In this document: positions 23,664-60,097 of the stretch, in pieces
How positions within the stretch are numbered: the stretch's first letter is position 1
How the letters are laid out: each line of letters opens with the position of its first letter
NCBI RefSeq assembly: GCF_037042905.1
Contig: NC_087252.1
Location: 6,634,001-6,698,000, forward strand
Reading direction: 5' to 3'
Length of the DNA stretch: 64,000 bases
From: Lytechinus pictus
Lineage: Eukaryota
Notes under the pieces: model-generated
The model's database searches: none
Told to the model about the DNA's origin: nothing
What the model saw: only the letters and a program-made list of their open reading frames with translations
Made by a program: the position numbers and the translations under genes

Positions 23664-23817
23664 NNNNNNNNNNNNNNNNNNNNNNNNNNNNNNNNNNNNN
23701 NNNNNNNNNNNNNNNNNNNNNNNNNNNNNNNNNNNNNNNNNNNNNNNNNNNNNNNNNNNNNNNNNNNNNNNNNNNNNNNNNNNNNNNNNNNNNNNNNNNN
23801 NNNNNNNNNNNNNNNNN
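23664..23817. other. Assembly gap (154 N)
   Basis: Run of n. Confidence 1.
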
Positions 23818-30243: not shown

Positions 30244-30303
30244 TTACAAGTCCAGGGTAGACGCATACACCCGTTCATCCAGGTCATTAAGTGACAGGTA
30301 GCT
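30244..30303 (-). CDS. Gene 2 last exon (SYLSLNDLDERVYASTLDL*)
   Basis: ttcacag|AGC...TAA; conserved in the paralog at 60038..60097. Confidence 0.88.
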   Translation of the reverse strand, partial: SYLSLNDLDERVYASTLDL

Positions 30304-31436: not shown

Positions 31437-34400
31437 ATATGTATATATGTATATATATATACATGTATATGTATATATATATATACAGTGCGTCCCACAA
31501 AAAACGAAACCGAGATTTATCGATAATTTATCATAACTTAATCACAAATACAATAGACAAATGACCTACCATTGTAAAGCTTAGAATCTCCTCTTTCATA
31601 AAAAATTACCTATATTATTTCTCATTCACGCATGAATGAGCAAAAACAATTGAAGAGGGGATACCAAAAAGTCATTTGGCGGGCTGTATCTGGGTTTCAA
31701 AAAGAAAACCACATTTAAAAAAAATTCAATATCTGCTCTTTAATTTGATACCTCAATTACAGAAAATGGTCAAGAAATAACAAAGTTCTGGTTATTTGAA
31801 ATAAGGCTTGAATTTCATAAAATTAAGAGGTTCTGCAGGCTAGCGTTCAAACTCACTTGACACTCCGTTTTGTTGACGATCGGCCAGGCATTAAGTCTTT
31901 TGTTAACCATTTGATTGCTTCTGTAGGAAACCGGTGAAAACACGTTTATTTAATGAAATAATGGAAATACAAGCTTTGTTTTGAGGGAACATAACATTTT
32001 TACTTCTTGACCATTTTTGGTGATTAAGGTATCAAATTAAAGAGCAGATATTGAACTTTTTAGGCATGTGATTTTCTTTGTGAAATTCAGATACCCCCCG
32101 CCAAATGAATTTTTGGTATCCTTTCTTCAAATTGTTTTTGCTCACTCATGCGTGAATGATGAATAATCTAAGTAATATCTGATGAAAGAAGAGATTCTAA
32201 GCTTTACATTGGTAGGTCATTTGTCTGTTTTATTTGTGATTAAGTTATGATAAATCGTCGCTTAATCTCGGTTTCGTTTTTTCTGGGACGCACTGTATAT
32301 ACATATATACTATGGTTTATACAAAGGAAATGCAAACAGTAACATGGGATCAAACTGTTGGAAGAATTAGAGTTAAATCTTACATGAGTCTTTTCTAGAA
32401 TCCTTTCCAAATCCTCCAGGATTCGGTCAAAGTTGGTCCTAGATGTAGGGTCCTTCTTCCAGCAAGTACTCATAATCGCATACCTGTGAAATTAAATAAT
32501 AATTGTTTATAATATACACACTGCAGTAACGTAGCTGCCCAGAGTGGACCACGACATAATTTAACTCTGGGATGAAAATCATGGTGTTATTAACACAAAT
32601 TTGGTTTTAATATAATACATTGGATCTGTTATTAAATTACCTAAGACCTTTGAATATTTCGGAAGACAGTTTTGTGTTGTTATTAACACAGTCGTTGTTA
32701 AATGAGAAGTTCACCCTGAAGAAAAGTTTGTTGTAAAAATAATAGAAAAAAAAATCGATCACAATTTTGATGAGGCTTTGACGGAAATCCATAAAAAATT
32801 AAAAAAAGTTATTAATATTTGATTTTGTTTTTGTATTTGTGACGTCATAACATACATGTAAAATTTATAAAAGTCATATTGGTTTAGGGTAACTATACTT
32901 TTTCTTTATTCTTTCAGGAGTGGAGATGAAGTAATTTGTCTGTTGATATTCTGGAGGTAAAATAAACATTTTCCAAAGAAATTGAGAAATTGAAATTTCA
33001 TTGATTATTTTACTACATGATAAAAGATGTTGGCATATTACGTCAAAAATAAAAACACGGAAATTATGACTTTTCCTAATCTTCGATGGATATTTCTCAA
33101 ACCTTCACCAATATTTTGTTTTATTATTTCCTCTGCTATTTTTACAATGAAAATTCTATCAAGGTGAACTTTAAACTGCAAGTTTACGTTAAATCGCGTC
33201 CAATACTAAAACTCATAATTTTACTTGAGTTTATGATAAAAATAAATAATGGAGTTATTACGGATTATTATGATTATCGTCATCAATGAAATTTTGTATT
33301 CTTTTCTAATAAGCTTTCCCTTTTGTTTACGAAAGGTTTTTGATGTTAATCATTTGAGGTTATTAATGTACTAATTATTGACGATCAGCTTGTGTATCTT
33401 TCTAGAAATTTCCTTCAAAACATTATTGGTCAAGGTTAACACAACTGAATAAAACAGAAATTACACTTCTTGCGCACAGTGACGAGGGCGTTGCATCTGG
33501 TAACCCTTGGCAACCTCCGTCTGGACAGTGGTAAAGGTCATTTTAGGGTATGGCCTTGCACCTACATTTATGAGAAAAAAAAGAATGATCATGATGATAT
33601 TCTGAAATATCTGAATATTGGATGACTCCAGGTTTGATGGTTTTGTTTAAAAGAGGTGCAAGTATTAGAGTTATATCAAAGTATAGAAATTCTTCCCACT
33701 CGCATACCCCCCTCCACCCCCTTCTCTCTGCCAAGAAGGAGCTCTTTCTCATCTCTCCCTAAGTTTCCAACGAGCAAATATCTTAACATCCGTGTATTTT
33801 TCACTTTAATAGCTACATCTTTAACAATCTTGAATCCCTACATCCCAAGGCGTGTCACCGTTAGAAAAAATTATGATTTCATCATTTATTTGTGTAAGTG
33901 TAAGTAGAAGCAAAAATCAGGGTATTTGTGTAAGTAGTCATGGTTGTCAAATCATTGTTGTTGCTTTCATTTAGCCTATCATCTTCATCATTTTGTAATT
34001 CTTTCAATTATAAATATAATATAGGATTTGTATAGCGCACGTATCCACATTGCTAGGTGCTCAAGGCGCTCCTATATTATCCCGGCTAAGCTTGTCTACC
34101 GATTCCGGTGCGCACAGCCTTTGAAGAATTACTTCCTGCCGACACCCATTTACCTCACCTGGGTTAAGTGCAGCACAGTGTGGGTGAATTTCTTGCTGAA
34201 GGAAAACACACAATTATATATAATCATAATCACTACCACCATCATCGTCATTAATATTTTCTGATATATATCGTAAAAAAAAAAAAACCCAGAAAATTTT
34301 ACAGAAGAAAAAACACCCCCAGATTTTACAGAAAGAAGTAACCATGGTAACCAAATCATTCTGTAAATTGTTAAAACAGGAAAGATTTTATACATTTTTT

Positions 34401-37400
34401 ATAGAATTTTACAGAACATGTCTGTTTTAAAAAGGGGGAAAACAGTTTATTACAATAAATTTGTAAGGTTACATACACCAAATATCTATTTTCTGTAATT
34501 TTACACAAATGCATGTAAGATTACACACTGCAGTAAGATTACAGGTGTTCTCGAGACTCTGCTTCAGGAATTCAGTTTTTTTTAAGTAGAAATTTTCTAA
34601 CAGTGTGGAAATTTAAGGTCAATAAAATAAATTTACACGCGTAGCTCCTGGAACCTCCTTCCTTACCCAGTGTCACTATTTCCCACAAGACAATACCAAA
34701 AGACCAGATGTCTCCTTCTTTAGTTTGGTCATTCGTTGCCATGATTTCTGGTGAACTCCATCTGGTTGGTTTCTAAGACGATGTAAATAAATGTGTTAAT
34801 AATTCAATCGATTAAGAATATCAATCTGCACCTTTCTTAAGTAGTCAAAATGTGTTTTACAATATTTCATCATAACTATTGTCTCGTGTTATTCAATCTT
34901 CATGTATTTCGTATTAGCTAACCAGGGGCCCGTATCATGAAGAGTTTCATAAAGAGTTATAACTGTTGTAACTCTTGGTAGTTGCCAATAATGGCAACTA
35001 CCATGGCAACATGGCTTAGCAGCCAATCAAAATCAAGAATACCGTGGTAGTTGCCATAATGGCAAAGTCACAACAGGTGTAACTCCTTGATCTATGTTAA
35101 ACAATAATGAATAATCATTAGGATTAACCCGTTACACTTACAGCTACGTCACCAAAGAGCGATGAAGAAAGTCCATATTCTGATATCTTGCATTGCTTTC
35201 TTTCTCCAAGCAACACGTTGTGAGCGCAGAGAGCTCCATGGATGATCTGAAAAAAAGAAAGACAACTTATACTATAAGGACATCAAGAGAATCGTCGTGT
35301 ATCTTGATCTTTGTTGAAACTAGATCAATTTGTTCCAAACGGAGGGGATGTAAACTATGCCTTATAATAAAATATGAATGTAAGTCCCTGACGAAAATTA
35401 AGTCATCGAGTATCTTTTAAAAAGTTCTAAAAGAACAAATAAATGAGGTTTCTGGTAAACAGTGCACGGGAGCACGCAGCGGATCAGCCGCTGCAATCGA
35501 CCTGCAACACGCGGAGATTATGCCTTCCGAAAATATTTGTTAAGATATCGTGGAACATTTTTATATTTTGCATTGGTATTTTGTGACAAGAATTTTCTTC
35601 GGGGACTTTCTGAACAACCATTTTGCCAATAAAGCTCAATCAAAAGATCTATTAAAGTGGTTGGTTAACATTGGTTTGACTTTAAAGAAATCTGAGCTAG
35701 AAGGTCACACTTATCACCTGTGTCTGTGATATGTTACAAAAATGAAGCCCAGAAAAAATTGCGTTCGAAAATAATTATTTAGTGCTTCAAAAATTGAAAT
35801 ATAAAGTGACCGGAAACACCATCTTAATTTTTTACAAAATCGGGGTTTGCCTTGTAGTTTTAGCTTTTCATTCTCAATAATGGTTGTTTTCAGGGTTTAT
35901 TAGTTCTAATACATGCACTTGTACGCATGTTTCATCTTGGTTTGAGAATTTTTTAAATCGGCTGCTTACAAAGTTACACAATACCTTTAACTAAAGGTTC
36001 CAAATTCTGATAACAACATAAGCATGAAAGTTAATTATTTTTGAAATCCCATTTAACTTCCTTTTGACGTCTGATTCCTCTTCATAAGGGATACCATTAA
36101 ACGATGTTACCTTCTTAGATGCAAGGAACTGCATCCCTTTAGCAACCTGCCAAGCCAAGTTAAGTAGGGTACCCTCATCTGTACGAACACCGTTTGGTTT
36201 GAGATTGCTGTACGTGGGTCGCGATTGCACCCCTGAAGTCTGTAGATGGGTAAGGAGTGTACCCCCTGATATGAACTCGTACAGAATACTGCCTAAATGA
36301 TAGATGATTTAAAGGAAAGGAAAGGTCAACTAGGTTACGTCATGCTTAATAAATCATCTTTAGTGCAATAAAGGATAACCAGGCTTGTGCCATCACATCA
36401 GGTTATCACGTCGGGTCGGAGAATGTAGCCGACAATTCGAGAAATTTGCTATAATTTCCTCAAAGCATCAGGGACATTGGACCCGATCTTTCGGGAATGT
36501 AAAGGACCTTTTTTTCGAATCGTTTGATTTCGTGATTGCCCAACCAAAAGCAATAACCCAATGTGATGACCCAAACCCGATAAATATCTCTTAATTATAA
36601 AATGGAATGAATTGTAATGTCTCCAGCTTGGTATAAGAGAATAATGGAAACAACGTGACGTGAGCATGGTGAGAGTCTGGGAAGCATGCTCTATTCTGCC
36701 TAGCGGTCCAGAACATGATAAAACAGACATACTGTCTTTACCAATGTCATTTAATTGAGTTCCAGATTGTTAAATGTTAAACTTTGACTACCCCTCTTTC
36801 TCTCTCCCCCAAAAAGGTGTATTTTCCCATCTGCCTTTAATGTCCTAACTCTCACGTTTGAGTGCCCCTGATACCAAGGATATTGGGAAAGGAGGCTAAC
36901 CAGCACCATACCGATTATTACAGATATTTTAAGAGTAACTAATACTTTATTTCAAAGATCATAATACTTTTAATGTCGATATTATCCAAGAGGTTTTACG
37001 TACCTTGCTCCTTACAATATCCGAGACATTTGACAATATTCGGTTGATCCGATAGCTGGTAAAGTATCTTGATTGTTTGAAGTACTTGTAATGATTTTAT
37101 CACGCGATCTATGATCATAAGAAAATATTAAATCGCATGACCTATCATTTTAATGTTTTCCAAAAAAAAAATGAATTAGGATTTACTAAAATAATGACAC
37201 GATTTAAAATAACAAGCAAGCGAGATGCTGTGATTTCTTATCGGGAGTTTTTACCCATTACCAATTTCTTGGCAAGCAAAAGACAAATATAACAATTATT
37301 TTCTATCAAAAAGTGGGACATGTGCTTCTTTTGCGAACCCCTGCCCCTCTTGCCATGTTAGCCTGGTTTATCAAGGGGAAGCCAGTGGGATGAACACTAT

Positions 37401-40400
37401 TGGTTTAGTTTTCATTATTCTTGTTCAGAATGACACCGAACAATGATATGCTAATTATAAAATTCAATTTTCATTGAAATGACAAACCAAGCATTACCTT
37501 AAGATTTATATCATTGTTAAAGGCCCATGCAGTCGCGTCGTTACGTGCAAGCCTTGCGGGTAACTAATTTTCCGACCTGCATATCGTCCACGGGTCGGCC
37601 GCATCGACAGTATCACGCACACAACTCGCAGAAGAATGTGTGCTCGCAGAAAAGTTTTAACATGCTCACAAACATTTTGCGGGTGAGTTTGCGGGCATTC
37701 ACGCGCAAGGCTTGCACGGAACGATGTAACAGGGCCTTTAATAAACATTATTGAATCAATGGGCTTATCACCTGGAATTTGCCTGATAGCAACGTCGATA
37801 TGGTTTTGGTTTGAGCGGAGGTCTCCCTTCCACACCTCGCCGAAGTCACCCCGTCCAATCGAGCCAAGTCTGGTGAAGAATGTCACGTTTTCACGAGCGA
37901 TGACGAAAGAGTGGGATGAATCGAGTTGTAATGTTGTGTACGCTAAAAAATTGTTTAAGAAACATAATTATTTTCGGTAAAATACAATTATTGTCATATT
38001 TAAAACGACAAATCCAAGCAATCCATATGAACTAAAAAGAAAGGGATAGTCTTTGATGATTATATATTGAACAATGATTATATTATCAGACTCAACGCAA
38101 AAAAGGATAAAAAAGTACGCCTTTGCCTATTAGAATATATATTTTGGCGTACACAATTCGAAATTATATGATATCTATCAGTTTATGCGATGATAATAGT
38201 TGTTATAGTGTGTTAAAATAATATACTTTAGTGTTTAGATGTAAATGTTTACGTGTTTTAAAAAATAGATGTATATAATATGATTTTACTTTAAGGTTGA
38301 ATGATGAATATATACAATAGTAACAATAAAAACACCATTGTTGAAAAGTTTTCACCTCTATCTCCACTTTGAATCATCTCATAAGCCACGTTGTCATTCA
38401 TCTCCTTTGGTGTATTTACTTCATCTCTGTTTAAAAAAAATGATTAGAGTTCATTATATCTCATAAGATATAAGTCATATTTTGTTTGTAGGCATTTAAT
38501 AGCACATTTATATTCCACAACAATCATGCAGGAAACAATTATTGTAATGACCAAACGATTATAGTAACCACGGGTGATTAACCATTATACATGTACGTAT
38601 ATAATATCGTGTATATGAAACTGAACGGGATTAGGAAAAAAACGGACTTAACCGTACACTGCTGGGTTAAAGTCGTCACACTTTTTATGAAACTAACGGA
38701 CAAAAATTGCAATAGAATAAAAACGTATCTTTCCCAGAAAATAATGGAACTGAATGATTATTCATTTGTATTGTAGTAACAAATAAAAAAAGGTTTCAAT
38801 AGCTGACAATCTGTCATACATCAAATATCAATAAATCATCCGATATTTGAACTGTTTTTAACGGTCGGGTAGTTCATTAAACAAATTCATAATAACTGAA
38901 GTGAAATCATCATTTCTTTCTCTCTCTGTTAATATACATATACCTTAGTAAAATTGGGACCTAAACGTTGCATTTTTATGCAGTTGCAAAAATACTGACC
39001 GGGTATTGAGACGAAGTGAGGGGTATATGGTGATTCCAAATATCATATCAATAATGTGTTAAAGCGGGTGTTCGGTATGCGTCTTGCCTGTTCATGAACA
39101 AGGGTTTTTGGTGAGGTTGTGTGCGTATGTGTGTGTGTGTGTGTGAGAGAGAGTTTTTGCAAGGTGATTCAGGAGGGTGTGTGCGTGTAGAGGATGTGAG
39201 GTCGTGTGTCATAGATTGTTCGAGTATGGTAGAGGTTTGGGTGTGTTTGTGTGTGTGTGTGTGTGTGTGAGAGAGAAAGATTAGTGGGTGAGATGATGTG
39301 CGAGTGTGGCAGACGTTTGGGTGTTTCTGTATTTGTGTGTGTGTGAGAGAGAGGGTGTACGAGCGTGGCAGAGGTTTGGTGTGTCTGTATGTGTGGGAGA
39401 AAGAGAGAGCGGTGCGTGGATTAGAGGGTCCGCGAGTGTGGCTGAGGTTTGGGTGAGTCTGTATGTGTGTGTCTGTATGTGGTGTGTGTGAGAGAGGGAG
39501 AGGGATGGGTGAGTGTGGCAAAGGTTAGGGTGTGTCTGCGTGTGTGTGTGTGAGAGAGAGAGAGAGGGATGGGTGGGTGAGAGGGTGTGCGAGTGTGTCA
39601 GAGGTTTTAGTGAGGGTGTATGTGTGAGAGATAGAGAGGGGTGGGTGAGAGGGTGTGCGAGTGTGTCAGAGGTGAGGGTGTGTCTGTATGTAGGTGTGAG
39701 AGAGGGGTGGGTTGGTGAGGTGTGCGAGTGTGGAAGAGGTTTGGGTGTGTCTGTGTATGTGTGTGTGTGTGTGTGTGAGGAATGGGTGGTTGAAAGGGTG
39801 TGCGAGTATTGCAGATGTTTGGGTGTGTTTGTATGTGTGTGTGTGTGAGGGATGGGTGGGTTTTAAATATGTACGAGTGTGGCAGGGGTTCGGATGTATC
39901 TGTATGTGTGTGTGTGTGTGTGTGTGAGAGAGGTGGATGGGTGGATGAAAGGTTGTGTGAGGTGTGCAAGTGTGGCAGAGGTTTGGGTGTGTCTGTATGT
40001 GTGTGAGAGAGGGTGCGCGAGTGTGTCAGAGGTTTGGGTGAGGTTGTATGTGTGCGAGATAGAGAGGGATTGGTTGGTGTGCGAGTGTGTCAGAGGTTTG
40101 GGTGTGTGTGTGAGAGAGAGAGCGGTGCATGGGTTAGAGGTTTAGTTGAACGGATATGTGTGAATGTGTGTGCATTTGAAAGGTACTAAGGTTGAGAGAG
40201 GGTGTAAGAGCGCTTGTGAGATTATTTTGTGTGTGAATGGGTAAGGAAGTGTGTATTTTGTATGTGCTGAAATTAGAGAATGTGCCTGTGCGAAAAGATG
40301 ATTTGGAGTTAACAAAGACTTGTGTGCAGTAATGAGTCATTGTAGGCCTGTAGAATGACAGAGTGGGTGTTTCCGTGGATGGGTGCGCCAGTGCGTGTGA

Positions 40401-43400
40401 TAAAAAAAAAATGTTTTTCCTTCCACTTACCCTTTTTCATTCATCTTTGACCCATCGAACTCTAGTGAATATGAATACAAAAAACACGTTGGGAATATAG
40501 TGATAAGAAAAGAATGATCCATGTGTAAAGTGAAATGGGAAACATATTGAGTTCACCCTAGAAAAAATACGTCTTGTTGAAATAAACATAACTTAATAGG
40601 TTACTTAGTGTCCATTTAACTTTCCTATGTAGTCAAGAAAAACAAGAGTGAAACAAGCACATTCTCTAGATTATTTTATCTTCTTTTTATTTTCATGTAA
40701 TAGCTATTTCAATAGAAATGATGACCAACAATCACCTGGTTTAGTCCTTCTCCTTAGGAGTACGAACTGTACAATGTTGATGATGATAGAAACTACTAGA
40801 AGGATTGCTAAGATAGCTATTCCAGCAGATGCTCCAGACCTCAAACCAGTCAGTGAACGTGGACATGGAGTGCATGTAGGCTCAGATGTGATGGATGTGG
40901 TCTCTGGTTGATAATCAATGTTTTAAAAACAAGAAACATACGTATTCGACATAGTGTATTACACGCCCGGGGGTGTTTCACAAAGATCTAAGTATGACTT
41001 AGAGTTACACTTAATTGCCGACGCGTTCATGTTTTGTGACGTGCAATCTTATTGATTACTAGGCAATAGAGCGCGACCTCTTAGCATGATCTGACCAACG
41101 CGGTCATGCCTTTATAACGCATGGAACTAGGCATTTAAGTGCGACTCTACATCATACTTACATCTTAGTGAAAGCCCCCCCGTTTTATTTGAACTTGTCT
41201 ATTTCAACTTTCGATCCACTATTTCAAAGTCCACCCTAGAAAATTGTTGATTTGGTTAAATAGAGAATAATCAAAGTAGCATAATGCTGACAATTTCATC
41301 AAAATCGGATGTAAAATGAGAAAGTTATGACATTTTAAAGTTTCTCTTATTTTTCACAAAACAGTGATTTGCACAATTCAGTGACATGCGAATGAGACAG
41401 TTGATGATGTCTTTCACTCACTATTTCTTTTGTTTTTATTGTTTGAATTATACATTATTTAATTATAGTATTAAACAATGATAATTCCACATGTTCAGGG
41501 AGGTATCATTCGTTGCTTCACTTGACAGTGAGGAGAAATTATAATATTTCGTAGTTCAGATAATAAAATACCAAAGAAATGGTGGATGATATCATCAGTC
41601 TCCTCATTTGCATATCAATTAAGCAAAACTTTAAAATGTCATAACTTTCTTATTTTACAACCGTTTTTTATGATATTTTCAGTGTTATTCTTGATGGATT
41701 CTTCTCTTTTTATTCAAATCAACTTTTTGTTGGGGTGGAACTTGTCCTTTAAGTTTGATTTTCACTCAAAAATTCATACAGCAACCACACCCCTTTTTTC
41801 TGGCACCGATTAGTAAGATCGCGTTATGCAATACAAAAATCATAGATAAGATAATGTTGCATCAGTGTCACTTAAAATTAGGAAATATCTCTCAAACGCG
41901 AACAAATACGATTTGACCATGTTGCTGCGTGCCAATCTTGTTCGGACATATCCTTTATTAAAAAGGCAACTTCAAGGCTTTTAGAAACCAATCAGTCCCA
42001 ATTCCCTTCCCTTGTGATAAAAACATGTTACCAAAACTTGCTTTCTGTAGTATATCTTCAATGCAACTCAACCGTGAACTGCATAGTTGGATCTTGGTGC
42101 ATAAAAACCAAGCTACAAATCAAGAAAGTGTACTTGATCTCCTCCCCTGTCACAATTCTGAGCCAAATTCCAACCATTCTACAACTAATATAACTTAATA
42201 AAGTGTAGCGCCCAGTTTCTCCATATGCCATGGCATCTGGAGTAAACTTAGTTACCCGTAAAATTGTTCTCAAAAACCTTCTGTGGAAAATTTCGATTTG
42301 AGCAATATCTTCATAGTCACATACTTACCCATTCCCATCCCCATACACACCCATATGTCAGTATTGGTAAAATTATCTGAATAAATTATTCACACTGTGT
42401 ATCAATTGACAGTTGTAAATCTTTTTGTTTTTGCTAATAACATGAATAAAGTGTACAAAGCTTTCCTTGCCGTTGATTTATACTTATATTATGCTATTCT
42501 TTACTTTGACCCAAGTCAAAACAGGTATCAGGGAGTAATTGAGTAGAATTTATAAAAATGTCCTTTTTCATCAGAATACACGGTACGCCGTGATAACCAC
42601 CATATTTTCCTGTTTGCTGATATTGAGAATTTTGCTGATATTGTGTAAAATATGACATTTTCGGTAAAATGTTATGTAAAATATGATTTCTTATTTCCCT
42701 TTTCCCACGTTCTTACGAATATGCTTTAAACATGATAAAGGTATTCAATTATTTTAATTAAACGAAGAAGTTTGAGCGCTAATAGCTTTCGGGCCTAGTT
42801 AACTTGTACCAGGGAGTTGGGAGTACTCTAATCCCATCTCCCTGCTTGTTTTACCCTAAGAAAAATGCAATTGAAATACGTTTAGGGAAGCCCAGATTAA
42901 ATTCAGCACCATCAGAACGAGGAAATTCATACGCGGTTAACTGTCGTTCACACACAAGTACATAATATAAAACGGAGCTTGAATTTTACATCGGTAGATG
43001 TGTTGTTCGTTAACATATTTGCCGATTAAAGTAGCAAGGATAGCCTGGCTCAATGCACATCTTTTGAAATTGATCAAGCTACAACATTTCATCACTTATC
43101 AGCATATGCTTCTGTACATTTGAAAATCTATTGAAATTCTTTAAAATGGACTAGCGTTCCTGTCTCGTCTTAAGCATTTAAACACGTTTGAGTACAAAGT
43201 CTAAGACCTGTTACTGCCATTTTGTTTCAAAATCATCCAAGTAGATACTAATAATGACAATAATAATAACATGCAACATGTGCAGATACGTACTATGGTA
43301 GCTCTAAAAAAGCGGTGCATTTTATTATCCAAATTTGCACGTGAAAATAACCCATGCTCAGAAGATACAATAGTCTTGTGGCAAGCATCTAGAGTGTATA

Positions 43401-46400
43401 AAATTGATATCCTTGTGTAAGTATTTGGAACAAAAAGTCTTGCCTATTTTCTGATAAACTTTGTATATAACCTCACGCTCCATTCCTATATATTGTTTGA
43501 TCTGGATATTACATTGCGATTTAATCATTCGTCACAATTTATGTATATATATGATAACCATTTCTGATTATTATTAGGGGAAAGAAAAATGACTTTGTAT
43601 TTTCTGAAAGTATGACAGCCTTAGATGTAATAAATTACACCAAGATAGAAATTTCAAAATATACTCTTACCTCCTTCATAATCTGTCTTTGCATGGCTAG
43701 TTGTCAATTTTCCTGCGATTGCGGAAAATCATATGTATATAATTGCAATGTAAATAAGGGACAAAAATAATCTTTTTTTAGGAAAGATAATTGAGAAAGT
43801 ACTCTGATAATTGTTTCATTATGTCTCATTCTATCCGATTTTGTAATGATCACCTCTCCCGTCTCTATGATGTTGTTAACCAATTGCCATGATCGTAATT
43901 GTATAGACACGAGCTAAAAAAGAAGAAAAAACGTCTTTCTAAACACGAACAAAGATATTATTTACATGTGCCACCCTTGTACATAAACACGTAATAAGTC
44001 ACGCAAATATAATTGAAAAGTTTCATATGATATTCTTACCTTCTTCATATTCTGTCGTTGGATGGCTCGTCATCAATTTTTCTGTAGTTTCTGAAAATCA
44101 TACATCATCAACAATAATATCGTTGTGTCATTTTATGGAATAAGCATTATTTCCTATTTCTGTATCAACGATGAATATAACGTCATTATCCGTTCCTAAC
44201 ACAATACAATGTTGTAATGATGTTGCAATGTTGTAATGGTCATCTATTTTCACATTTTAATTATCGCCTCTGTCATGTATTTAATGTTATTTGCAGATTG
44301 CCATGATTGAATTTAAAGACGACAGAAACAAAAAAAAGAACATTCTTTCGAAACACATATATATCAAGTCCCCCTTTTTAATACACCCGCTCAAAGACTT
44401 TCTTGTCTGATGGAACAATTTACAAATCTTTTAAAATTGTGAATGAGCCTTTTCATACCTCACAGGCAGAGCTAGCAAATATAATATAGAAAAGCAGTCA
44501 TCACATTGCTCAGTTCACTGGTAACTATATAAATTTATAAACCTTGGTCATCATAAAAAAATGTATAAAAAATGGTTGAGAAGTTTTTTAAGCCAACTAT
44601 TCTTTAATGAGCTTACTTTGGGGGCCATACGTTTTTTTGCCACTTGCTGTATTTCCAAGATAATTCCCTGCAACACATTCAAACTCTGTTGACAGGTCAT
44701 ATTCTGATTCTGTTAAAGCCACAAAATTGATTCCCGTTGAAGATTCATGCTTCAGGATATCATTGGCGTATATGAAGTAATGTCTTATCGCTGGAAAAGG
44801 TTGGTTGGCAGCATCAATGGCGCATGTAACCCTCAAGTTAGGATCAAGTGACTCAAACGTCACAGTCACAATATCATTACAAGGTCGATCTGAATGATAA
44901 TGAAGGAAAAGAATGTATAGATAAACAGTTATCGGAATAACCCTGGGAATTCCATTTCCATTTAAATAATAATATTTGAAGATTTTAGCCTCGGAATAGT
45001 TTACTAGATAGATGGCGCATAATTAATGTTGTGTTTATTATTATCATTATTATCTGTTGGTGCGTTAGTCTTTTGGTCCGTTAGTCTGTTAGTCTGTTCA
45101 GGAATGTTAAGGTTTTTGTTCAACTTGCTCCCATTTCCTTTCTTCTGCATAAATTATGCTTATACTTCACCTTGGATAATACTACACTTGGTACAAATTA
45201 TCGTTTGGTATACCACATGTGTGTTCATAAGGAAGATGGGGTCAGAGGTCATCTAGGGGTCAAAAGATCATTGCATATTTTATTTATTGCAATATCAGGC
45301 GAGACTCATGGTTTGTGAGCCATCTTGTTTATTTATGTAGTAATTATCCAGCTTTTTATTTTTCATTTCTTTCTTTCTGGGGCTTAGTATGCTATTCCAC
45401 AGTCAACTATCAGAGTAAATCTGAAGACAAGAGTTTCTATCCATTCATTTCAAGATTATTTTCCAAACAATAGTGAGTATACATGTAGAGTAGCAACTGA
45501 TCAAAATGTGGGCAAGAACAAGCGTTTCAAGCCAAACTCGTGCGGAGTAAATTCTCACGGTACACTATAAAAATATTAAGTGCTAATTTAGCACTTACAG
45601 TGCTTGTATAGTGACTGAACTACGAGTGCTGATTTTCATGTTCAAATTTAAACTAGAAAATCAGCACTCAATATACAACAACTGTAAGTACTAAATTAGC
45701 ATTTCATTTTTTACAGCGTATAACTATGATTGAAAAGTGTTAGGAATGCAAGATATCCATTATAATGAAATTTACTGATATCAGCATTTGATGGCATAAA
45801 CAGTCTGCCATTGCAAGGTGCTTACTTCTGACGGTCTCCTGTAAACTATACTCTCTACCATCACTACAAAAGTTCATGGTTTTGTGTAAGGACGGAAGAT
45901 GGTTTTAGGGACTGGTTTAAGGTACATAAGGAAGTGTTACAAGGCCGCAAATTTTCTCCTATTCGTTTCATCATAATAGTCTGGATGATCGGTGCAAAAA
46001 ATAGCAAGAATTGTTCAGATTATGGTACAAGCATGAAATTTGGCTGACAGGTAGAGTAAACAGTGCTGAACATTTTTAGCTGGGGGTGCCAACCTGATCT
46101 CTCTTCGTATAGCAACAGTTGCTAGGTAACATATTCACCTTAGCAACCACCATTTTGTGGTGTTATCTTCATTTTAAAAACTATATTTTTACTTCTAAGC
46201 ACCAAATTTACAATCACATATCAAGCAACGTTCCAACCATGTACAGCAACAGTTGCTAAGCAACACATTTTCCATAGCAACTACAAATAATATTCCTGAA
46301 TACCACATCTGGTCATAATATCTGAATGAAAATTGTTAGAAAATTGGTCAAAGTATAAAACCTGGGAGTAAAAACTAATCATAATAAAAAAATTATAAAA

Positions 46401-49400: not shown

Positions 49401-52400
49401 CATGACTTGTATACATGGTATAATTGTTCTTGGGTTGTTGTGATTAATGTATTAATGCGCTAATAAAAAAGATGAGATTCATATAAATTTTAATCATAAA
49501 AAAGATACCCTATAATAATTTGTTACCGTGGAAAATGTTACTTAGCAACGGTTGCTATGGTGCTCATTTTGTCTACCTATGGAAACATTCATTACATGAG
49601 GAATCTATGGGCCAGATTTAATTTATGAGCTATTCTGATTAAATTATAATGATCTAAACTAATATAAAGAATTTGTTGCTAGGGAAGAGGGTCACTTAGC
49701 GACCGTTGTTATGAATAAATGGATCAAAACTATTGTGATACAAAGGAACATACTTTAGATTAAAATTTGTATGACATATCGCCTGTGAAAATGTAACTCA
49801 AGCCCAATTAAGCTCAGTTACTAAGGTAAATAGATTACCTAGCAATCGTTGCTATGTTTAGTGAACTCACGCTGGCACCCCCTGCTAAAAATGTTTAGAA
49901 TAACTTACTCTACCTTTTGTGCCAATTTGCATGCTTGTACCATTTTCTGAACATTTTTTTCACCAATCACCTAGACTATAAGCAATGGATTTGGTTAGGA
50001 ACAGGTTATATTGCGGTCGCATGCAGCCCATCACAGCTAAGAAAGATATTGGATGCAAATGGGGATAATGGCGGAAAAAAAAAACTTGTTCAGGAACTCA
50101 TCCTCCTCCGAAATAAACTCTTTATTGGCTAATAGTAAAATTGCTTTCATTTGAAGATGTTAGCTATTTGTATCTCGTTAAATGACCAAGGGGTTACGTA
50201 CGAAACTCACTGCAGTATTGGAAGACTGCACTACGGGCATTTTAACATCTACGCAAAATCTCGCCAAGCAGCAATATTTCCCTTAAGTCTGGTTTTCTTT
50301 ACGGATCTGTGACATGAGGATTGAACATGTCTAAAGAACACAAATTTGATGACATAGATACGAACCGCTTCCACAGAATACTTTGACGTATTAAACTGAA
50401 TGCTTATAAGAAGGAGGACATCTTCTTGCCCTGCAAATTATTTGCCCTGGCAAATTTTCATTCGGCAAGACTCCGGAGGCTACCAATGTGGATTGTTACG
50501 CCACTGCATGTAACTTGTAGTACAATGTATCTTCTCACATTTTCCAAAAGGTTTTATCAAAATAAAAGTTTCTCTCACCAGAAACGTTTTTTTCTCCTGT
50601 ATTCACATTTAAATCAGGTACATTTCTATTGCCTCGCTGAATACATTCATTCCGATGTGTTTTTACACCAACGAGCGATGTGAGATACCGATCAAAGCTA
50701 TTATCTTGAATTACATACCATCGATCACTTTACAATCGGTTTCATCGTTGTGACTTTTGTGGTCCCATTTTAGCGCAATATCGAATAATAACATTATGGC
50801 ACCTTGCCCACTATCCAAACCAAAACTTCTGTCATTAAGCCTTTTAATATTCTCGTTGATATAAGATATTTCATTTCGAATGCTGACATTGTGGATTGAT
50901 CGCTGCTACTCATAATAAAGCAGTTAGAAAACATTGCAGTGCATTTGCATTTTTTAAACCCCAAACTTGCCCATTTTTGCCACAAATCATGTTTTCTAAA
51001 GTATCACCCTGACTCTCAAGAAAAAAATATTGCAAGTTTCTATGATCAAAATCATGGGTAAATTAGTATTCATTTTTTATGCTTGTGCATAAAAATGAAA
51101 GTATATATTAGTCTATACGAAAATTCATGTACACATCCAAGCGAAATTTCTGAAATTTGACTTTTAAAATTTGAGACAATACAAGTTCTTTTTGTAAAAA
51201 ATGATACGCAGATTGAAATTTGTCAAGATGATAATTATATATCAGTAAAATTTTCCGGAAAGTTTCAAGGCAACTGCTTCATATTTTCTTTAATTTATGT
51301 AAAATCATGTATTTCACAAATTCAAATTTTGGGCAAACAAATGTAAAAATAATACAATTTTCTATTCAAAATTTCAGGCAAATGACGTTTCTAGCTCTCA
51401 TAAATAGTATTAAATTGTAGGAAATGTATTTATCTTTCGTATGAAACAAGTTTTATAGCAATCGAAAGTTTATGTCAAAATCAATTTAAAAAAGTAGAAT
51501 TTTCTGAAAATTTGTCGGGTTAGGTTCAGGAAACAGACTGTTCTTCTCATATACATGTATTGTTAATTCTGGCAGCGTCAAAATTTGGCCCAGAAGCCCC
51601 ACATGAAAATGTATCCTTCTTGGAGTGGCACCTCGTTCAATTATAATCCTGAATAGCACATGCTGATGTATTGTCCGAATATGACAAAAATTAAGTTTTT
51701 ACATGTACATAATGTCAAAGGGAAGATTATCCTACATGTATAGGATGTACATTAAGTATTATGATTGCATTTTTGTCGCTATTATAAACCAATGAACCTT
51801 CTTCACATTTTCTTGCCTTTGTAACGAGATTTCTAGTACAATAATTGGTAAAATTGTGAAAGTTAGTGTCATTAGAAGGATTGTTATTAGTTGAGCTAGA
51901 AAGATATCAGCTCCGTGATAACTCCACATACGTGCTGTGTAAAAAATATTTTATGTTACATGTATTTAAAACAAAACTTTTTAAGATTCAAAACTTGAAT
52001 GTCATAGAGCAAAGAGTCTATTAAGTACAATATAAACTGCATCTCAAGTGAGTAGTGCATAGATGTTCGAATTTGATGAAACATAATTAATACCAGGAAT
52101 AAATATGTTTTTTATGAATATCTTTTTTCAAAATCAACAGTGAAATCTTAAGTACTCTGCTTTGGTATGTTTTATTAATGTGTAAATGTTTTAATACCGA
52201 TTTTTTTTAATTATTAAACAACATAAACATATAATTTGCTTACTGTGCATCTCAAGATTTTCTGTTATTTCTCCATTGAGAGCAGATACGTCATGACCAC
52301 TGATGACGCATTTCAGTGTTTCGCCATAGTTCTCTCTAGTAGCTGGAAATGTACAGACAATCTCTTTACTGGAGAACCCTGCATCAGCTGGAAGAGTATA

Positions 52401-55400
52401 TTCTAGAAAACCATCACACGGGGCAGGATCATCACCTAGCATCAATGTAAGTGTTTCTTGTGGTCTACCTCCTGTAGCTCTGCACGTTGCTATGTATACA
52501 TCAGCATCATCTGCAATAGCACTTCCAATCGTCAATGATGATGTTGATTGGACTGAAAATACAATGTGATTTTTTTTATCTTTACATGGTATGTCTACTG
52601 ACATTAATCTATTTTCAATGATACTACAAATTATTTTAATACCACTATTTTCCGAAACATGAACATTTAGATTATCTTTTAGCATTCATATGGTGTGTTC
52701 GTTCTCCACCAAAAAAAAATAAAAAATAAATAAATAAATAAAACGTAGAACACCTCTTGCATTTAAAAGTTTTTGCAAGAAACATATTTGTGTCAGTGTC
52801 AGTTAAAGATAAGGTGTTGATGAATATAACTTGAATTTATCATCTTTATTTAACCTACCTTCTACTTTAAGTTCCTTGACATCAGTCTCCAATGGCCCTG
52901 AGAAGCATTTATACCGTCCTTCATCGTCTATCTGTGAATTAGTGATTGTCATAGTGGATTGGGGATAAGCAACACCCGTCTGTGATACATCAAAATTGTC
53001 ATATTTTGTAGCTTCTGTTGGGTGGGTTCTGAGTATACCTCTGAAAATATCAACATTTGGAACAACTGAGACATCTGTCCATTTAAATACGCCTCCTATG
53101 CCTATAGAATCAGGGGTCTGTCCGCATTTGTAAACTGCATCATGTCCTTGCTCTACCGCGGAAGGTCCGTTGAAAGCCAAAAGTGACTGGCTGTTCGCAA
53201 GTTCTATGAACTTCAAAAAATCAATAAACAAGAATATAAACAAGATGTTATGTAAATGAGAAACAATGAGAAATACCTTTGGTCCTATGTATCGGAGGGA
53301 GGGGGTAAAGTTTGCTATACCCCTCTCGCAAACACGTGTCAAAACCACCACAACGCGTTTAATTGATTGCCAATTTATAAACTATTTACATGATTTGATA
53401 ATTCCCACGCGTTTTATTCTCCATTCTTACTTCTTTTGTGAATCAAAACCCCGTAAAGCATATAAAAAAATGCCCTTTAGCGATAAATAAAAAATCGATT
53501 GAATTATAATTGAAATGTGAAAAAAAGCGAATGATAAAGACGAAAACATATGGGCCTAAGCTCTATCTTTATTCGATTTCTTTAAAGACAAAGACCGGAT
53601 AAAAAAAATTGAAACTGAAAATGTGAAATCCTATAAACTAGTAACATGACAGAGCACATCAATGTATGTTTCATGGATGTCAATGGCTTGGCAGCTGAGC
53701 ATTTTGTCTAAGAAAAAAGAACAAATCAGGATCGAAAATTACATAAAATCATAATCATACTCATAAGCCAGGAGGGTTGTGATTAGATATATTTGTATGT
53801 ACATGCAAATAAGATCATTATTTTCTTGGTTTCCAGATTTTGAATTTTTTTTTTTACAATCCACAGAGGAAAGTATTGACTAGATTTTTTGTTTTTTCTC
53901 TGATTGGCCCTTATTTGGCATAAATTGTTATGTCAGAAACTGTTCAACAATTGATTCGGCTGACAAATTCAAAACAGCCCTTAAAATATGTAAAACCTTT
54001 AATATTCAAATTGTACCTCAGCTCTATTAAGTGAATTCACAACTGTTCTTTTTCTTTTCTTTATTTTCGTAAGGGCTTGTAGATATATTTATTATGTGTT
54101 ATGCAATAGGCCCTATATAAATAATGACTATTACTATTCTATCATCATTATCATTATCTACTTCAAGAGAAAACGGAATATTGAACATGGCAAAAACTAA
54201 TCCACAGCTGTAGATTTCCTTATGTTAGGTCTTCAAAAGAAAATCTATTTGTGATACCGATTGGTATGGAAGTAAAAAAATTCAGGTTACAGTTCGTTTT
54301 TCCAAAGGTTCGTACCTCCGAAACCCGTAAATTGCTAGATATCTTGATTTCGTAACAAAAATGAAAATGGGTTCATTCATCCGAAACTTTGTGGCGTTAT
54401 TCCGAAGGTTTGTTAGTCAAAAAACGAAAAAAGATTCGTTAGTCCAAACACGAAATAAAATTCGTTAGTCCGAAAATAAAATATAGTTCGTTAGTCTGAA
54501 ACTGAAATAGTCTATGTCGAAGCCGGGAAAATGGAAGGGCAGGCTTGAAGGGGGAGGGGGGGGGGGGGGGAGAATCACAGTTGCTATTAATTTGTTATGA
54601 GTATGGAAAGAGCTACTCTATCGTTACCGGGGCGATTTATACGTACGAAGGATTTTCTCGAAGCGGGTGATCATAGACTTATGGTGCTTGTTAATTTTCA
54701 TGCAGGAATCGATATCATGTTTGTGTCTGATTGGGGCCTGGATCCTGTCCACGGAGGATTATTTTATTGTTACTGGGGGAGCTGAGCATTGTCACAGTGG
54801 CCAGGTCCATGATGGGGGCGTGGGAAAACAGCAATCTGCAGCCATCGTAGCCAGCTTTATGGAAGGGGGGGGGGGACAGTTATTTCGCATTATTTCATTT
54901 TCGGAATAATGAACCTTCGGAATAATAAACCTCGTTTCGTTTCCGGACTTATTTACCTTCGGAAAAACGAACCTTTGAAATAATGAGCCCTTGTAGTAGT
55001 CGAATCTTTGGAATAACCGACCTTCTGAAAAACGAATGTATCCCCGAAAATGTTTTCGAGGCTGAAAGTGATATGAACAGATAAAGTATTCGCAGACTCA
55101 CAAACAGTGATAAACATGCATGAAAATATTTTGAATAAGAACAAAGGAAAGTGGGGACATGACATCATCAAAGTCCAATAACTGAATTATTTTTTTATCC
55201 TATTTTCACTTTCTGAAAGTGGTTTTTATTCTTTATCTTTTTATTTACATCGGTAGTCTGAAGTACCCCCTTTAAAATATAATCTCATTTAGTGTCGCGT
55301 ACAATAAGATTATATTAAAAAAGCTCTTGCCATTGTGTTATTGGTTTCATAATGTACGTCCCATGCTGAGATTAAGTAAATGCGTTCTCTCGGTATATTT

Positions 55401-60037: not shown

Positions 60038-60097
60038 TCACATATCAATAGCAGACGCATACACCCGTTCATCCAAGTCATTTAGAGACAGGTAACT
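60038..60097 (-). CDS. Gene 3 last exon (SYLSLNDLDERVYASAIDM*)
   Basis: ttcacag|AGT...TGA. Confidence 0.88.
   Translation of the reverse strand, partial: SYLSLNDLDERVYASAIDM

What the first reader, a model, noticed from the sequence alone, without database searches (positions are those of the whole stretch)
35142..37942. All four catalytic landmarks of the kinase are replaced while the fold motifs are intact
Seen: VAIK>VAIR, no Glu in alphaC (LQTIKIL), HRDLAARN>HGALCAHN, DFG>EYG, and a short Tyr-free activation loop (GLSSSLFGDVAKPTRWSSPE). GxGxFG, DIWSFG.VLWE, PYP and CW...P..R..F remain. Established: loss of the catalytic Asp and beta3 Lys abolishes canonical phosphotransfer. Inference: a scaffold pseudokinase, possibly still nucleotide-binding given the intact Gly loop.
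Basis: partly seen in the sequence, partly recalled or inferred. Interest (0 to 1): 0.72.

Follow-up and report, generated by a model that had tools for sequence, protein, structure and literature searches.

The report
Sea-urchin receptor with dead kinase domain
This is the kinase-like domain of a sea-urchin (Lytechinus pictus) membrane receptor; its catalytic residues were lost in an ancestor of sea urchins, yet the domain has been kept intact and is transcribed, so it is a maintained pseudokinase, not a working enzyme or a decaying gene.

Summary
On the minus strand, seven GT..AG exons (37942-32384) plus a tail exon encode a complete tyrosine-kinase fold (Pfam PF07714, 224 bits). It reads VAIR for VAIK, Thr at the alphaC Glu, HGALCAHN for HRDLAARN and EYG for DFG, and its activation loop is short and has no phosphorylatable Tyr. 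Contigs from two sequencing runs show every predicted splice junction.

The genome is Lytechinus pictus. The gene is RefSeq XP_063959132.1, auto-named "Tie-1-like".

It is one of about ten copies: nine in a tandem array on the same contig and one on another contig. It belongs to a family found only in sea urchins among the database hits. In that family:
- the beta3 residue is Arg in 56/56 proteins;
- the catalytic-Asp position is never Asp (Ala, Asn, Thr and others);
- the alphaC position is never Glu.

The Gly-rich loop, the catalytic-loop Asn and the DFG Asp (61/62) are kept. Only this gene has Glu there, and a second L. pictus model of the same gene has Asp, so the "fourth landmark" is allelic.

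dN/dS against paralogs is 0.16-0.20. All relatives outside sea urchins are canonical kinases.

Best reading: a non-catalytic docking and regulatory module that another kinase phosphorylates. That mechanism is inferred.

The scan reached the same family-level conclusion before, on paralogs about 325 kb away.

The parts
37772..37942 (-). Exon K1: end of the juxtamembrane segment (YTTL), Gly-rich loop GRGDFG, beta3 VAIR (Arg codon 37784-37782)
   Evidence: Splice sites and translation. PF07714 positions 6-36. K1-K2 and K1-JM junctions in X1 contigs.
37004..37108 (-). Exon K2: alphaC helix LQTIKIL (Thr at the Glu position, codon 37076-37074) and beta4
   Evidence: The TIE2 alignment puts the Thr opposite the alphaC Glu. 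The position is never Glu in the family.
36111..36292 (-). Exon K3: beta5, hinge, kinase insert with the conserved Tyr-x-Asn (YSN), alphaE
   Evidence: The Tyr is present in 60/60 proteins and the Asn in 54/58. The insert is low-confidence (disordered) in the model.
35142..35246 (-). Exon K4: catalytic loop HGALCAHN (Ala at the catalytic Asp, codon 35234-35232) and EYG (Glu codon 35180-35178), start of the short activation loop
   Evidence: gap-free ZAP-70 and EphB2 alignments. Position 35178 reads T (Glu) in X2 and G (Asp) in X1.
34667..34772 (-). Exon K5: end of the activation loop (KPTRWSSPE), alphaEF/alphaF DIWSFGIVLWE
   Evidence: An X1 contig spans K5-K6-K7 with 0 differences.
33465..33561 (-). 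Exon K6: GARPYP, alphaG region
32384..32483 (-). Exon K7: CWKKDPTSRTNF, alphaI, end of the kinase domain
30244..30303 (-). Last coding exon: tail SYLSLNDLDERVYASTLDL plus stop, carrying two conserved tyrosines
   Evidence: Tail tyrosines present in 56/58 proteins. The tail aligns with the TIE2 docking-Tyr tail.
38356..38426 (-). Juxtamembrane exon (..NDNVAYEMIQSGDR). The RefSeq start codon is at 38401-38399. With K1 it forms YEMI-x6-YTTL.
   Evidence: Junction 37942>38356 in an X1 contig.
40431..40461 (-). Mini-exon EFDGSKMNEK between the TM and juxtamembrane exons; it restores the reading phase
   Evidence: The same ten residues are present in the L. variegatus ortholog model P0046.
40736..40916 (-). 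Stalk plus transmembrane helix plus RRRTKP stop-transfer (acceptor site not fixed)
   Evidence: 59-75% identity to the TM exons of three family members.
44617..44889 (-). Ig-like exon 3 (phase 1-1), membrane-proximal
   Evidence: 35-46% identity to family members P0045 and P0037.
52244..52552 (-). Ig-like exon 2 (C2-set type, phase 1-1)
   Evidence: The matching part of P0037 hits Pfam C2-set_2.
52863..53190 (-). Ig-like exon 1 (V/I-set type); borders approximate. No signal-peptide exon was located.

Best explanation
The stretch encodes the pseudokinase domain of a type-I membrane receptor of Lytechinus pictus. The receptor has three Ig-like exons, a transmembrane helix, a juxtamembrane segment, the kinase fold and a Tyr-bearing tail.

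The domain descends from an active receptor tyrosine kinase of the FGFR/RET/TIE/Cad96Ca supergroup. In a sea-urchin ancestor it lost the beta3 Lys (now an invariant Arg), the alphaC Glu, the catalytic Asp and the activation-loop tyrosines. It was then multiplied into tandem arrays and kept under purifying selection.

It therefore most likely does not transfer phosphate. Inferred, not shown: it acts as a folded docking and regulatory module. Its conserved tyrosines are the juxtamembrane YEMI..YTTL, the kinase-insert YxN, and the tail YLSL and YAST. A separate kinase (Src-type or an active receptor partner) would phosphorylate them after the Ig ectodomain engages a ligand, and SH2 proteins would then be recruited.

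The family keeps the Gly-rich loop, the catalytic-loop Asn and the DFG Asp. That suggests ATP and metal ion are bound as a structural cofactor, as in HER3 or JAK JH2. The reference allele of this gene has replaced that Asp with Glu, and a second L. pictus allele still has Asp.
For: Shown:
- Exon model with GT..AG borders, equal to RefSeq P0103.
- PF07714 at 224 bits.
- Residue-level alignments to ZAP-70 and TIE2.
- Confident bilobal AlphaFold2 model, core pLDDT 86-97, matching FES/FGFR/RET structures at TM 0.7-0.8.
- All junctions present in spliced contigs, plus single junction reads in raw RNA-seq.
- About ten copies in the genome, all with VAIR and HG[A/S]LCAHN.
- 62 sea-urchin proteins from five species: Arg 56/56; never Asp at the catalytic position (Ala 27, Asn 20, Thr 12, others 3); never Glu in alphaC; Asn 61/62; DFG Asp 61/62; docking tyrosines 56-60 of 58-60.
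- All starfish, brittle-star, crinoid, hemichordate, amphioxus, arthropod and mollusc relatives checked keep the VAxK Lys and DFG; all but two (a starfish HCD, a hemichordate HRN) also keep HRD.
- Single sea-urchin clade, SH-aLRT 99, on a stem of 1.15 changes per site.
- dN/dS 0.16-0.20 at dS about 0.3 against five paralogs.
Against: - No biochemical data exist. The scaffold role, trans-phosphorylation and nucleotide binding are all inference.
- Expression in the two raw RNA-seq runs is only a few reads.
- RefSeq models this gene as a 323-residue protein that starts inside the juxtamembrane exon. No read links the Ig and TM exons to the kinase exons, so a cytosolic product cannot be excluded.
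- Pairwise dN/dS among tandem paralogs can be distorted by gene conversion.
- The review PMC4718504 stresses that nucleotide binding cannot be predicted from sequence.
Confidence: 0.72

Rival explanations
1. The domain is a weak or non-canonical kinase. It would retain some phosphotransfer, like HER3's residual activity or the relocated lysine of WNK, using the beta3 Arg and other residues.
For: The Gly-rich loop, catalytic-loop Asn and DFG Asp are conserved in the family. 20 of 62 members have Asn at the catalytic-Asp position, as HER3 does. Exceptions to sequence-based predictions are documented (PMC4718504).
Against: - Three catalytic positions are lost together.
- The catalytic-base position varies freely (Ala, Asn, Thr, Ser, His, Leu), which is not expected of a catalytic residue.
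- The tyrosine-kinase substrate motif AAR is replaced by CAH.
- The activation-loop tyrosines are gone and the loop is 5-8 residues shorter than in active relatives.
- This allele also lacks the DFG Asp.
Confidence: 0.07
2. The family is functional, but this particular copy is drifting towards loss. On this reading the Asp>Glu allele, the truncated gene model and the low expression are signs of decay.
For: - It is the only one of 62 proteins with Glu at the DFG Asp.
- The RefSeq model lacks an ectodomain.
- RNA-seq gives only single junction reads.
- The neighbouring copy carries a premature stop, so copies in this array do die.
Against: - All nine cytoplasmic coding exons, the TM exon and the three Ig exons are open, and all borders that could be fixed are good splice sites.
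- dN/dS against paralogs is 0.16-0.20, no higher than for other pairs.
- Its terminal branch (0.038) is no longer than those of its neighbours.
- It has a one-to-one ortholog in L. variegatus at 93% identity.
- Spliced transcripts exist.
Confidence: 0.12
3. It is a non-catalytic decoy or dominant-negative receptor. It would bind the ligand, or pair with an active receptor kinase, to damp signalling rather than relay it.
For: It shares all the pseudokinase evidence. Sea urchins do keep active FGFR-like receptors, one of them on the same contig.
Against: A pure decoy would not need five conserved cytoplasmic tyrosine motifs or a conserved folded kinase core under purifying selection. No partner has been identified.
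Confidence: 0.15

Closest known systems
HER3/ERBB3 (vertebrate receptor pseudokinase)
   Same: Both are membrane receptors whose kinase domain lacks the catalytic Asp and the alphaC Glu but keeps the Gly-rich loop, the Asn and (family-wide here) the DFG Asp. Both carry multiple docking tyrosines that must be phosphorylated by another kinase.
   Different: HER3 keeps the beta3 Lys, whereas here it is an invariant Arg. The ectodomain is different (Ig-like, not EGFR-type). This family is multi-copy and tandemly arrayed. No partner kinase is known. This allele has Glu for the DFG Asp.
EphB6/EphA10, PTK7/CCK4, RYK, ROR (other receptor pseudokinases)
   Same: They are receptor tyrosine kinase descendants that have lost catalytic residues and are maintained in evolution as non-catalytic signalling receptors.
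   Different: This is an independent loss in a different branch of the kinase tree (FGFR/RET/TIE/Cad96Ca supergroup). Among the hits it is restricted to sea urchins, and the pattern of substitutions is different.
TIE2/TEK kinase domain (best solved-structure match; source of the RefSeq name 'Tie-1-like')
   Same: It is the best single-sequence PDB hit (E 4e-47), and the alignment runs through the C-terminal tail tyrosines.
   Different: TIE2 is catalytically complete and has Ig-EGF-FN3 ectodomains. Family members here show only Ig, Sushi or Sema domains. A family profile prefers FGFR1/2.
Cad96Ca/Stitcher and the starfish/brittle-star 'Cad96Ca-like/FGFR-like' receptor expansion
   Same: These are the nearest active relatives by sequence (33-39% identity). 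They share the conserved tail motif and have similarly variable ectodomains in echinoderms. A tree uniting them with the sea-urchin clade is not rejected (p-AU 0.33).
   Different: The sampled ones keep the beta3 Lys and DFG, nearly all keep HRD (one starfish member reads HCD), and their activation loops are long and Tyr-bearing. Insect Cad96Ca has a cadherin domain, which is absent here.
Titin kinase (EFG in place of DFG)
   Same: It is a known case of Glu replacing the DFG Asp, argued to preclude activity (PMC4718504).
   Different: It is an unrelated Ser/Thr-type kinase that keeps its beta3 Lys and catalytic Asp.

Membership tests
Protein tyrosine kinase fold (Pfam PF07714) | Full-length match to the family model above the gathering score | tested here: met
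   P0103 scores 224.1 bits against a cut-off of 23.1, covering profile positions 6-258 of 258. The AlphaFold2 model matches FES/FGFR/RET structures at TM 0.7-0.8.
Catalytically competent protein kinase | beta3 Lys (VAIK) | tested here: not met
   Arg, opposite the TIE2 Lys. Arg in 56/56 family members.
Catalytically competent protein kinase | alphaC Glu | tested here: not met
   Thr, opposite the TIE2 alphaC Glu. Never Glu in the family.
Catalytically competent protein kinase | Catalytic Asp of HRD | tested here: not met
   Ala, opposite the Asp of ZAP-70 HRDLAARN. Never Asp in 62 members.
Catalytically competent protein kinase | Metal-binding Asp of DFG | tested here: not met
   Glu (GAA) in the window and in run X2. 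Asp in run X1, in the second L. pictus model P0104 and in 61/62 family members.
Pseudokinase (kinase fold lacking at least one of the beta3 Lys, HRD Asp or DFG Asp) | Fold retained, catalytic residue(s) missing, gene maintained | tested here: met
   fold; residues; selection, single old clade; spliced transcripts.
Pseudokinase (functional claim) | No phosphotransfer activity | not testable with these tools
   Needs an in vitro kinase assay.
TIE receptor family (RefSeq name) | Ig-EGF-FN3 ectodomain and an active kinase | tested here: not met
   Only Ig-type domains are found in the full-length family member P0037; P0046, P0007 and P0006 also have no EGF or FN3 domain. The window has three Ig-like exons. 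Catalytic residues are absent.
Cad96Ca/Stitcher family (RefSeq name of relatives) | Cadherin ectodomain; placement inside the Cad96Ca clade | tested here: not met
   No PF00028 domain in any sea-urchin member. Arthropod Cad96Ca forms its own clade (99), apart from the sea-urchin clade.
FGFR family | Orthology with FGFR; activation-loop YY | tested here: not met
   Sea-urchin FGFR-like proteins (P0174, P0175, P0217) form a separate clade with crinoid and brittle-star FGFR-like proteins. The activation loop here is short and has no such tyrosines.
ITAM-bearing immune-type receptor (works-like claim only) | YxxL/I-x6-8-YxxL/I in the cytoplasmic part | tested here: met
   YEMI-QSGDRA-YTTL is formed across the JM/K1 splice junction, which is seen in an X1 contig. 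It is conserved in Lytechinus and Strongylocentrotus; the spacing is 9 in Diadema.
ITAM-bearing immune-type receptor (works-like claim only) | Phosphorylation and recruitment of a tandem-SH2 (Syk-type) kinase; immune-cell expression | not testable with these tools

The most novel reading that the evidence does not exclude
The sea-urchin dead-kinase receptors are a lineage-specific family of variable recognition receptors (immune or self/non-self type). Fast-diverging Ig ectodomains would be coupled to a conserved pseudokinase that serves only as an ITAM/SH2-docking platform. In that case a receptor tyrosine kinase scaffold would have been converted into an ITAM-type receptor that signals through Syk- or Src-like kinases.
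Probability: 0.2. Interest if true: 0.75.

Novelty: new member of a known kind. Interest (0 to 1): 0.45.

Why it matters
Receptor pseudokinases such as HER3, PTK7, RYK and EphB6 are few, old and single-copy in vertebrates. This case shows an independent, lineage-specific loss of catalysis followed by tandem expansion and long-term maintenance. The loss predates the Diadema/euechinoid split.

The conservation pattern is informative: the catalytic base is free to vary, while the Gly-rich loop, the Asn, the DFG Asp, an invariant beta3 Arg and five tyrosine motifs are kept. That makes the family a natural experiment on what a kinase fold is retained for once it stops catalysing.

L. pictus is a genetically tractable sea urchin, and a natural Asp/Glu polymorphism at the metal-binding position offers a ready-made contrast for testing nucleotide binding.

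The gene names in RefSeq (Tie-1-like, Cad96Ca-like, FGFR-like, angiopoietin-1 receptor-like) are misleading for kinome and signalling inventories. I found no paper describing the family.

Tried and rejected
- **Exon-by-exon Pfam and PDB searches**. They gave only weak piecewise hits. The work became decisive once the RefSeq protein P0103 was recovered through cluster look-ups.
- **Literature searches**. I tried sea urchin with kinome, pseudokinase, Cad96Ca, ITAM and Ig-kinase expansion. No description of the family turned up. The 2006 sea-urchin kinome paper and the 2019 pseudokinase survey are not held, so prior mention there cannot be excluded.
- **Holothurian or other non-echinoid members**. 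Two family searches found none. This is absence from the hits, not proof of absence.
- **Ectodomain of the L. variegatus ortholog model P0046.** It does not map to this locus. It maps 1.1 Mb away in L. pictus, so I did not use it to model the target's ectodomain.
- **Exact sister group of the sea-urchin clade.** The quick tree does not resolve it (open fork). An AU test only shows that union with the starfish/brittle-star expansion is not rejected.
- **Complex prediction was not run.** I name no specific binding partner.


Full report
**What is in the window.** The feature lies on the minus strand of an intron-rich animal gene. Stop-free segments and splice-site inspection give seven kinase-domain exons, all with AG/GT borders:
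- K1 37942-37772
- K2 37108-37004
- K3 36292-36111
- K4 35246-35142
- K5 34772-34667
- K6 33561-33465
- K7 32483-32384

A tail exon lies at 30303-30244. Upstream are a juxtamembrane exon (38426-38356), a 31-nt mini-exon (40461-40431), a stalk/transmembrane exon (about 40916-40736) and three Ig-like exons (44889-44617, 52552-52244, about 53190-52863).

**The observation.** All quoted motifs are present: GRGDFG, VAIR, LQTIKIL, HGALCAHN, EYG, GLSSSLFGDVA|KPTRWSSPE, DIWSFGIVLWE, PYP and CW..P..R..F.

They sit on the catalytic positions. Exon K4 aligns without gaps to ZAP-70 VHRDLAARNVLL...KISDFGLS. This puts Gly-Ala on Arg-Asp of HRD, Cys-Ala-His on Ala-Ala-Arg, and Glu-Tyr on Asp-Phe of DFG. The full protein aligns to TIE2 with Arg on the beta3 Lys and Thr on the alphaC Glu. 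The activation loop is 5 residues shorter than TIE2's and about 8 shorter than those of FGFR-type relatives.

The whole domain scores 224 bits on PF07714. AlphaFold2 gives a confident bilobal model: core blocks have pLDDT 86-97, and the low-confidence parts are the N-terminal segment, the kinase insert and the tail. Foldseek matches it to FES, FGFR1/3/4, RET and MET.

**Identity of the gene.** A search with exon K3 found sea-urchin proteins. The spliced product is identical to XP_063959132.1 (P0103, 323 residues, "tyrosine-protein kinase receptor Tie-1-like"). That model begins at a Met inside the juxtamembrane exon.

**Transcription and the residues in reads.**
- Contigs of run X1 show all seven predicted junctions, including K1 to the juxtamembrane exon. 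One 844-nt contig covers K5-K6-K7 with no difference from the window.
- Run X2 shows three of the junctions.
- The two raw RNA-seq runs contain only single junction-spanning reads, so expression there is low.
- At 35178 the window and X2 read T (GAA, Glu), while X1 reads G (GAC, Asp).
- A second L. pictus protein model of the same gene (XP_054760657.1, P0104) also has Asp.

The Glu is therefore real, but it is one allele of a polymorphism. No listed variant restores Lys or the catalytic Asp.

**A family, not a one-off.** The genome holds nine copies in a minus-strand tandem array on the same contig (6.67-7.14 Mb). There is one more on another contig and a distant relative at 4.23 Mb. Every copy recovered has VAIR (VAAR in the distant one) and HG[A/S]LCAHN, and all but the target have DYG or DFG.

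Across 62 proteins from L. pictus, L. variegatus, Strongylocentrotus purpuratus, Diadema antillarum and D. setosum:

| Position | State in the family |
|---|---|
| beta3 | Arg 56/56 |
| alphaC Glu position | never Glu |
| catalytic-Asp position | Ala 27, Asn 20, Thr 12, Ser/His/Leu 1 each |
| catalytic-loop Asn | 61/62 |
| DFG Asp | 61/62 (the exception is this gene) |
| Gly-rich loop, first and third Gly | 56/56 |

Tyrosines in the kinase insert (YxN, 60/60) and the tail (56/58 each) are conserved.

The relatives outside sea urchins that I checked are from starfish, brittle stars, a crinoid, hemichordates, amphioxus, arthropod Cad96Ca, molluscan Ret-like proteins and a sponge. All keep the VAxK Lys, the alphaC Glu and DFG, and have a long Tyr-bearing activation loop. 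HRD is kept in all but a starfish HCD and a hemichordate HRN.

**Evolution.** In a maximum-likelihood tree of 70 kinase domains, all 32 sea-urchin pseudokinases form one clade (SH-aLRT 99) on a stem of 1.15 changes per site. Two old subclades are each present in Diadema and in euechinoids. The target pairs with L. variegatus P0046 (99) as its ortholog. The loss therefore predates the Diadema/euechinoid split.

The sister group is unresolved. Union with the large starfish/brittle-star expansion of active receptors is not rejected (p-AU 0.33). A single-sequence PDB search ranks TIE2, RET, KIT and FGFR highest, and a family profile ranks FGFR1/2 highest.

Codon alignments of K1-K6 taken from the genome give dN/dS of 0.16-0.20 between the target and five paralogs, at dS 0.27-0.31. 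The target's terminal branch is no longer than its neighbours'.

By contrast, the Ig exons are only 33-46% identical to those of family members whose kinase domains are 85-86% identical.

**How it most likely works.** Shown: the fold is intact, the catalytic residues are gone, the gene is spliced and transcribed, and the domain is constrained.

Inferred: it is a non-catalytic module. Its conserved tyrosines would be phosphorylated by another kinase and would recruit SH2 proteins. These tyrosines are:
- juxtamembrane YEMI-x6-YTTL, an ITAM-like spacing created by the JM/K1 splice;
- kinase-insert YSN;
- tail YLSL and YAST, which align with the TIE2 docking tail.

The pattern of a free catalytic-base position alongside a conserved Gly-rich loop, Asn and DFG Asp resembles nucleotide-binding pseudokinases such as HER3 or JAK JH2. 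It suggests ATP and cation act as a structural cofactor for the family. The review PMC4718504 warns that this cannot be read from sequence. It also notes titin's EFG as a precedent for a disabling Asp>Glu change. The reference allele may therefore bind metal less well than the Asp allele.

**Rivals.**
- Residual or atypical activity: unlikely, given three to four simultaneous losses and a variable base position.
- Decay of this particular copy: argued against by the open frames, dN/dS, the ortholog and the transcripts. It is kept alive by the unique Glu, the truncated RefSeq model, the low expression and the dead neighbouring copy.
- A decoy role: hard to square with the conserved tyrosine motifs.

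**Comparison with what is known, and novelty.** It is a pseudokinase of the receptor-tyrosine-kinase type, which is a known kind. It is not a TIE, FGFR or Cad96Ca ortholog, despite the automatic names. I found no publication on the family, though two key papers are not held.

Earlier agents of this scan, working on paralogs about 325 kb beyond this window, reached the same family-level reading. My analysis was done on this gene independently and agrees with theirs. Specific to this gene are the allelic Glu at the DFG Asp, the truncated annotation and the dead tandem neighbour.

Noticed in passing
window 60041-63079 and beyond the window end (L006 2741-2941; G000:C8:6698219-6698398): The tandem paralog at the window's right edge has an in-frame stop in its K3 exon (LAW*VAKG), which lies just outside the window. 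It also has a one-codon deletion in its K1 exon, which sits about 13 kb upstream of K4.
   Followed up: partly
window 38356-38426 plus 37931-37942: The ITAM-like motif YEMI-QSGDRA-YTTL is formed only after the juxtamembrane exon is spliced to K1. The junction is present in a contig of run X1. The motif is conserved in Lytechinus and Strongylocentrotus members; in Diadema the spacing is 9.
   Followed up: partly
window 35584-35990 and 33984-34183 (introns): RNA-seq depth is very high here (hundreds to about 1000 reads, 95-99% identity), with many loose ends and an insertion joint at 35830/35831. These look like members of an abundant, transcribed repeat family inside the introns, not part of the gene's mRNA.
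   Followed up: no
window 39050-40440: The intron between the mini-exon and the juxtamembrane exon holds about 1.4 kb of CA-rich simple repeat. It translates as long His-Thr runs in all frames.
   Followed up: no
L037-L039 (G000:C8:7779875-7783659): The ectodomain of the L. variegatus ortholog model P0046 (XP_041470871.1) has its L. pictus counterpart 1.1 Mb away from this gene. Either that model is chimeric or ectodomain exons have been exchanged between family members.
   Followed up: partly
window 36180-36222, 37058-37076 (run X1 contigs): The X1 contigs for K1-K3 differ from the window at several codons, towards the state of the paralogs or the ortholog (Arg>Gln, Thr>Ile, alphaC Thr>Ser, Ile>Val, Gln>Lys). 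The K5-K7 contig is identical to the window. This could be a divergent allele, a related taxon ('organism A') or gene conversion; it is not resolved.
   Followed up: no
(P0006, P0007): Family members carry quite different ectodomains on the same dead kinase: Ig only, Sushi repeats (S. purpuratus P0007) and Sema-PSI-Ig (Diadema P0006, which may be a fused model).
   Followed up: no
window 23664-23817: A run of 154 N (assembly gap or masked stretch).
   Followed up: no
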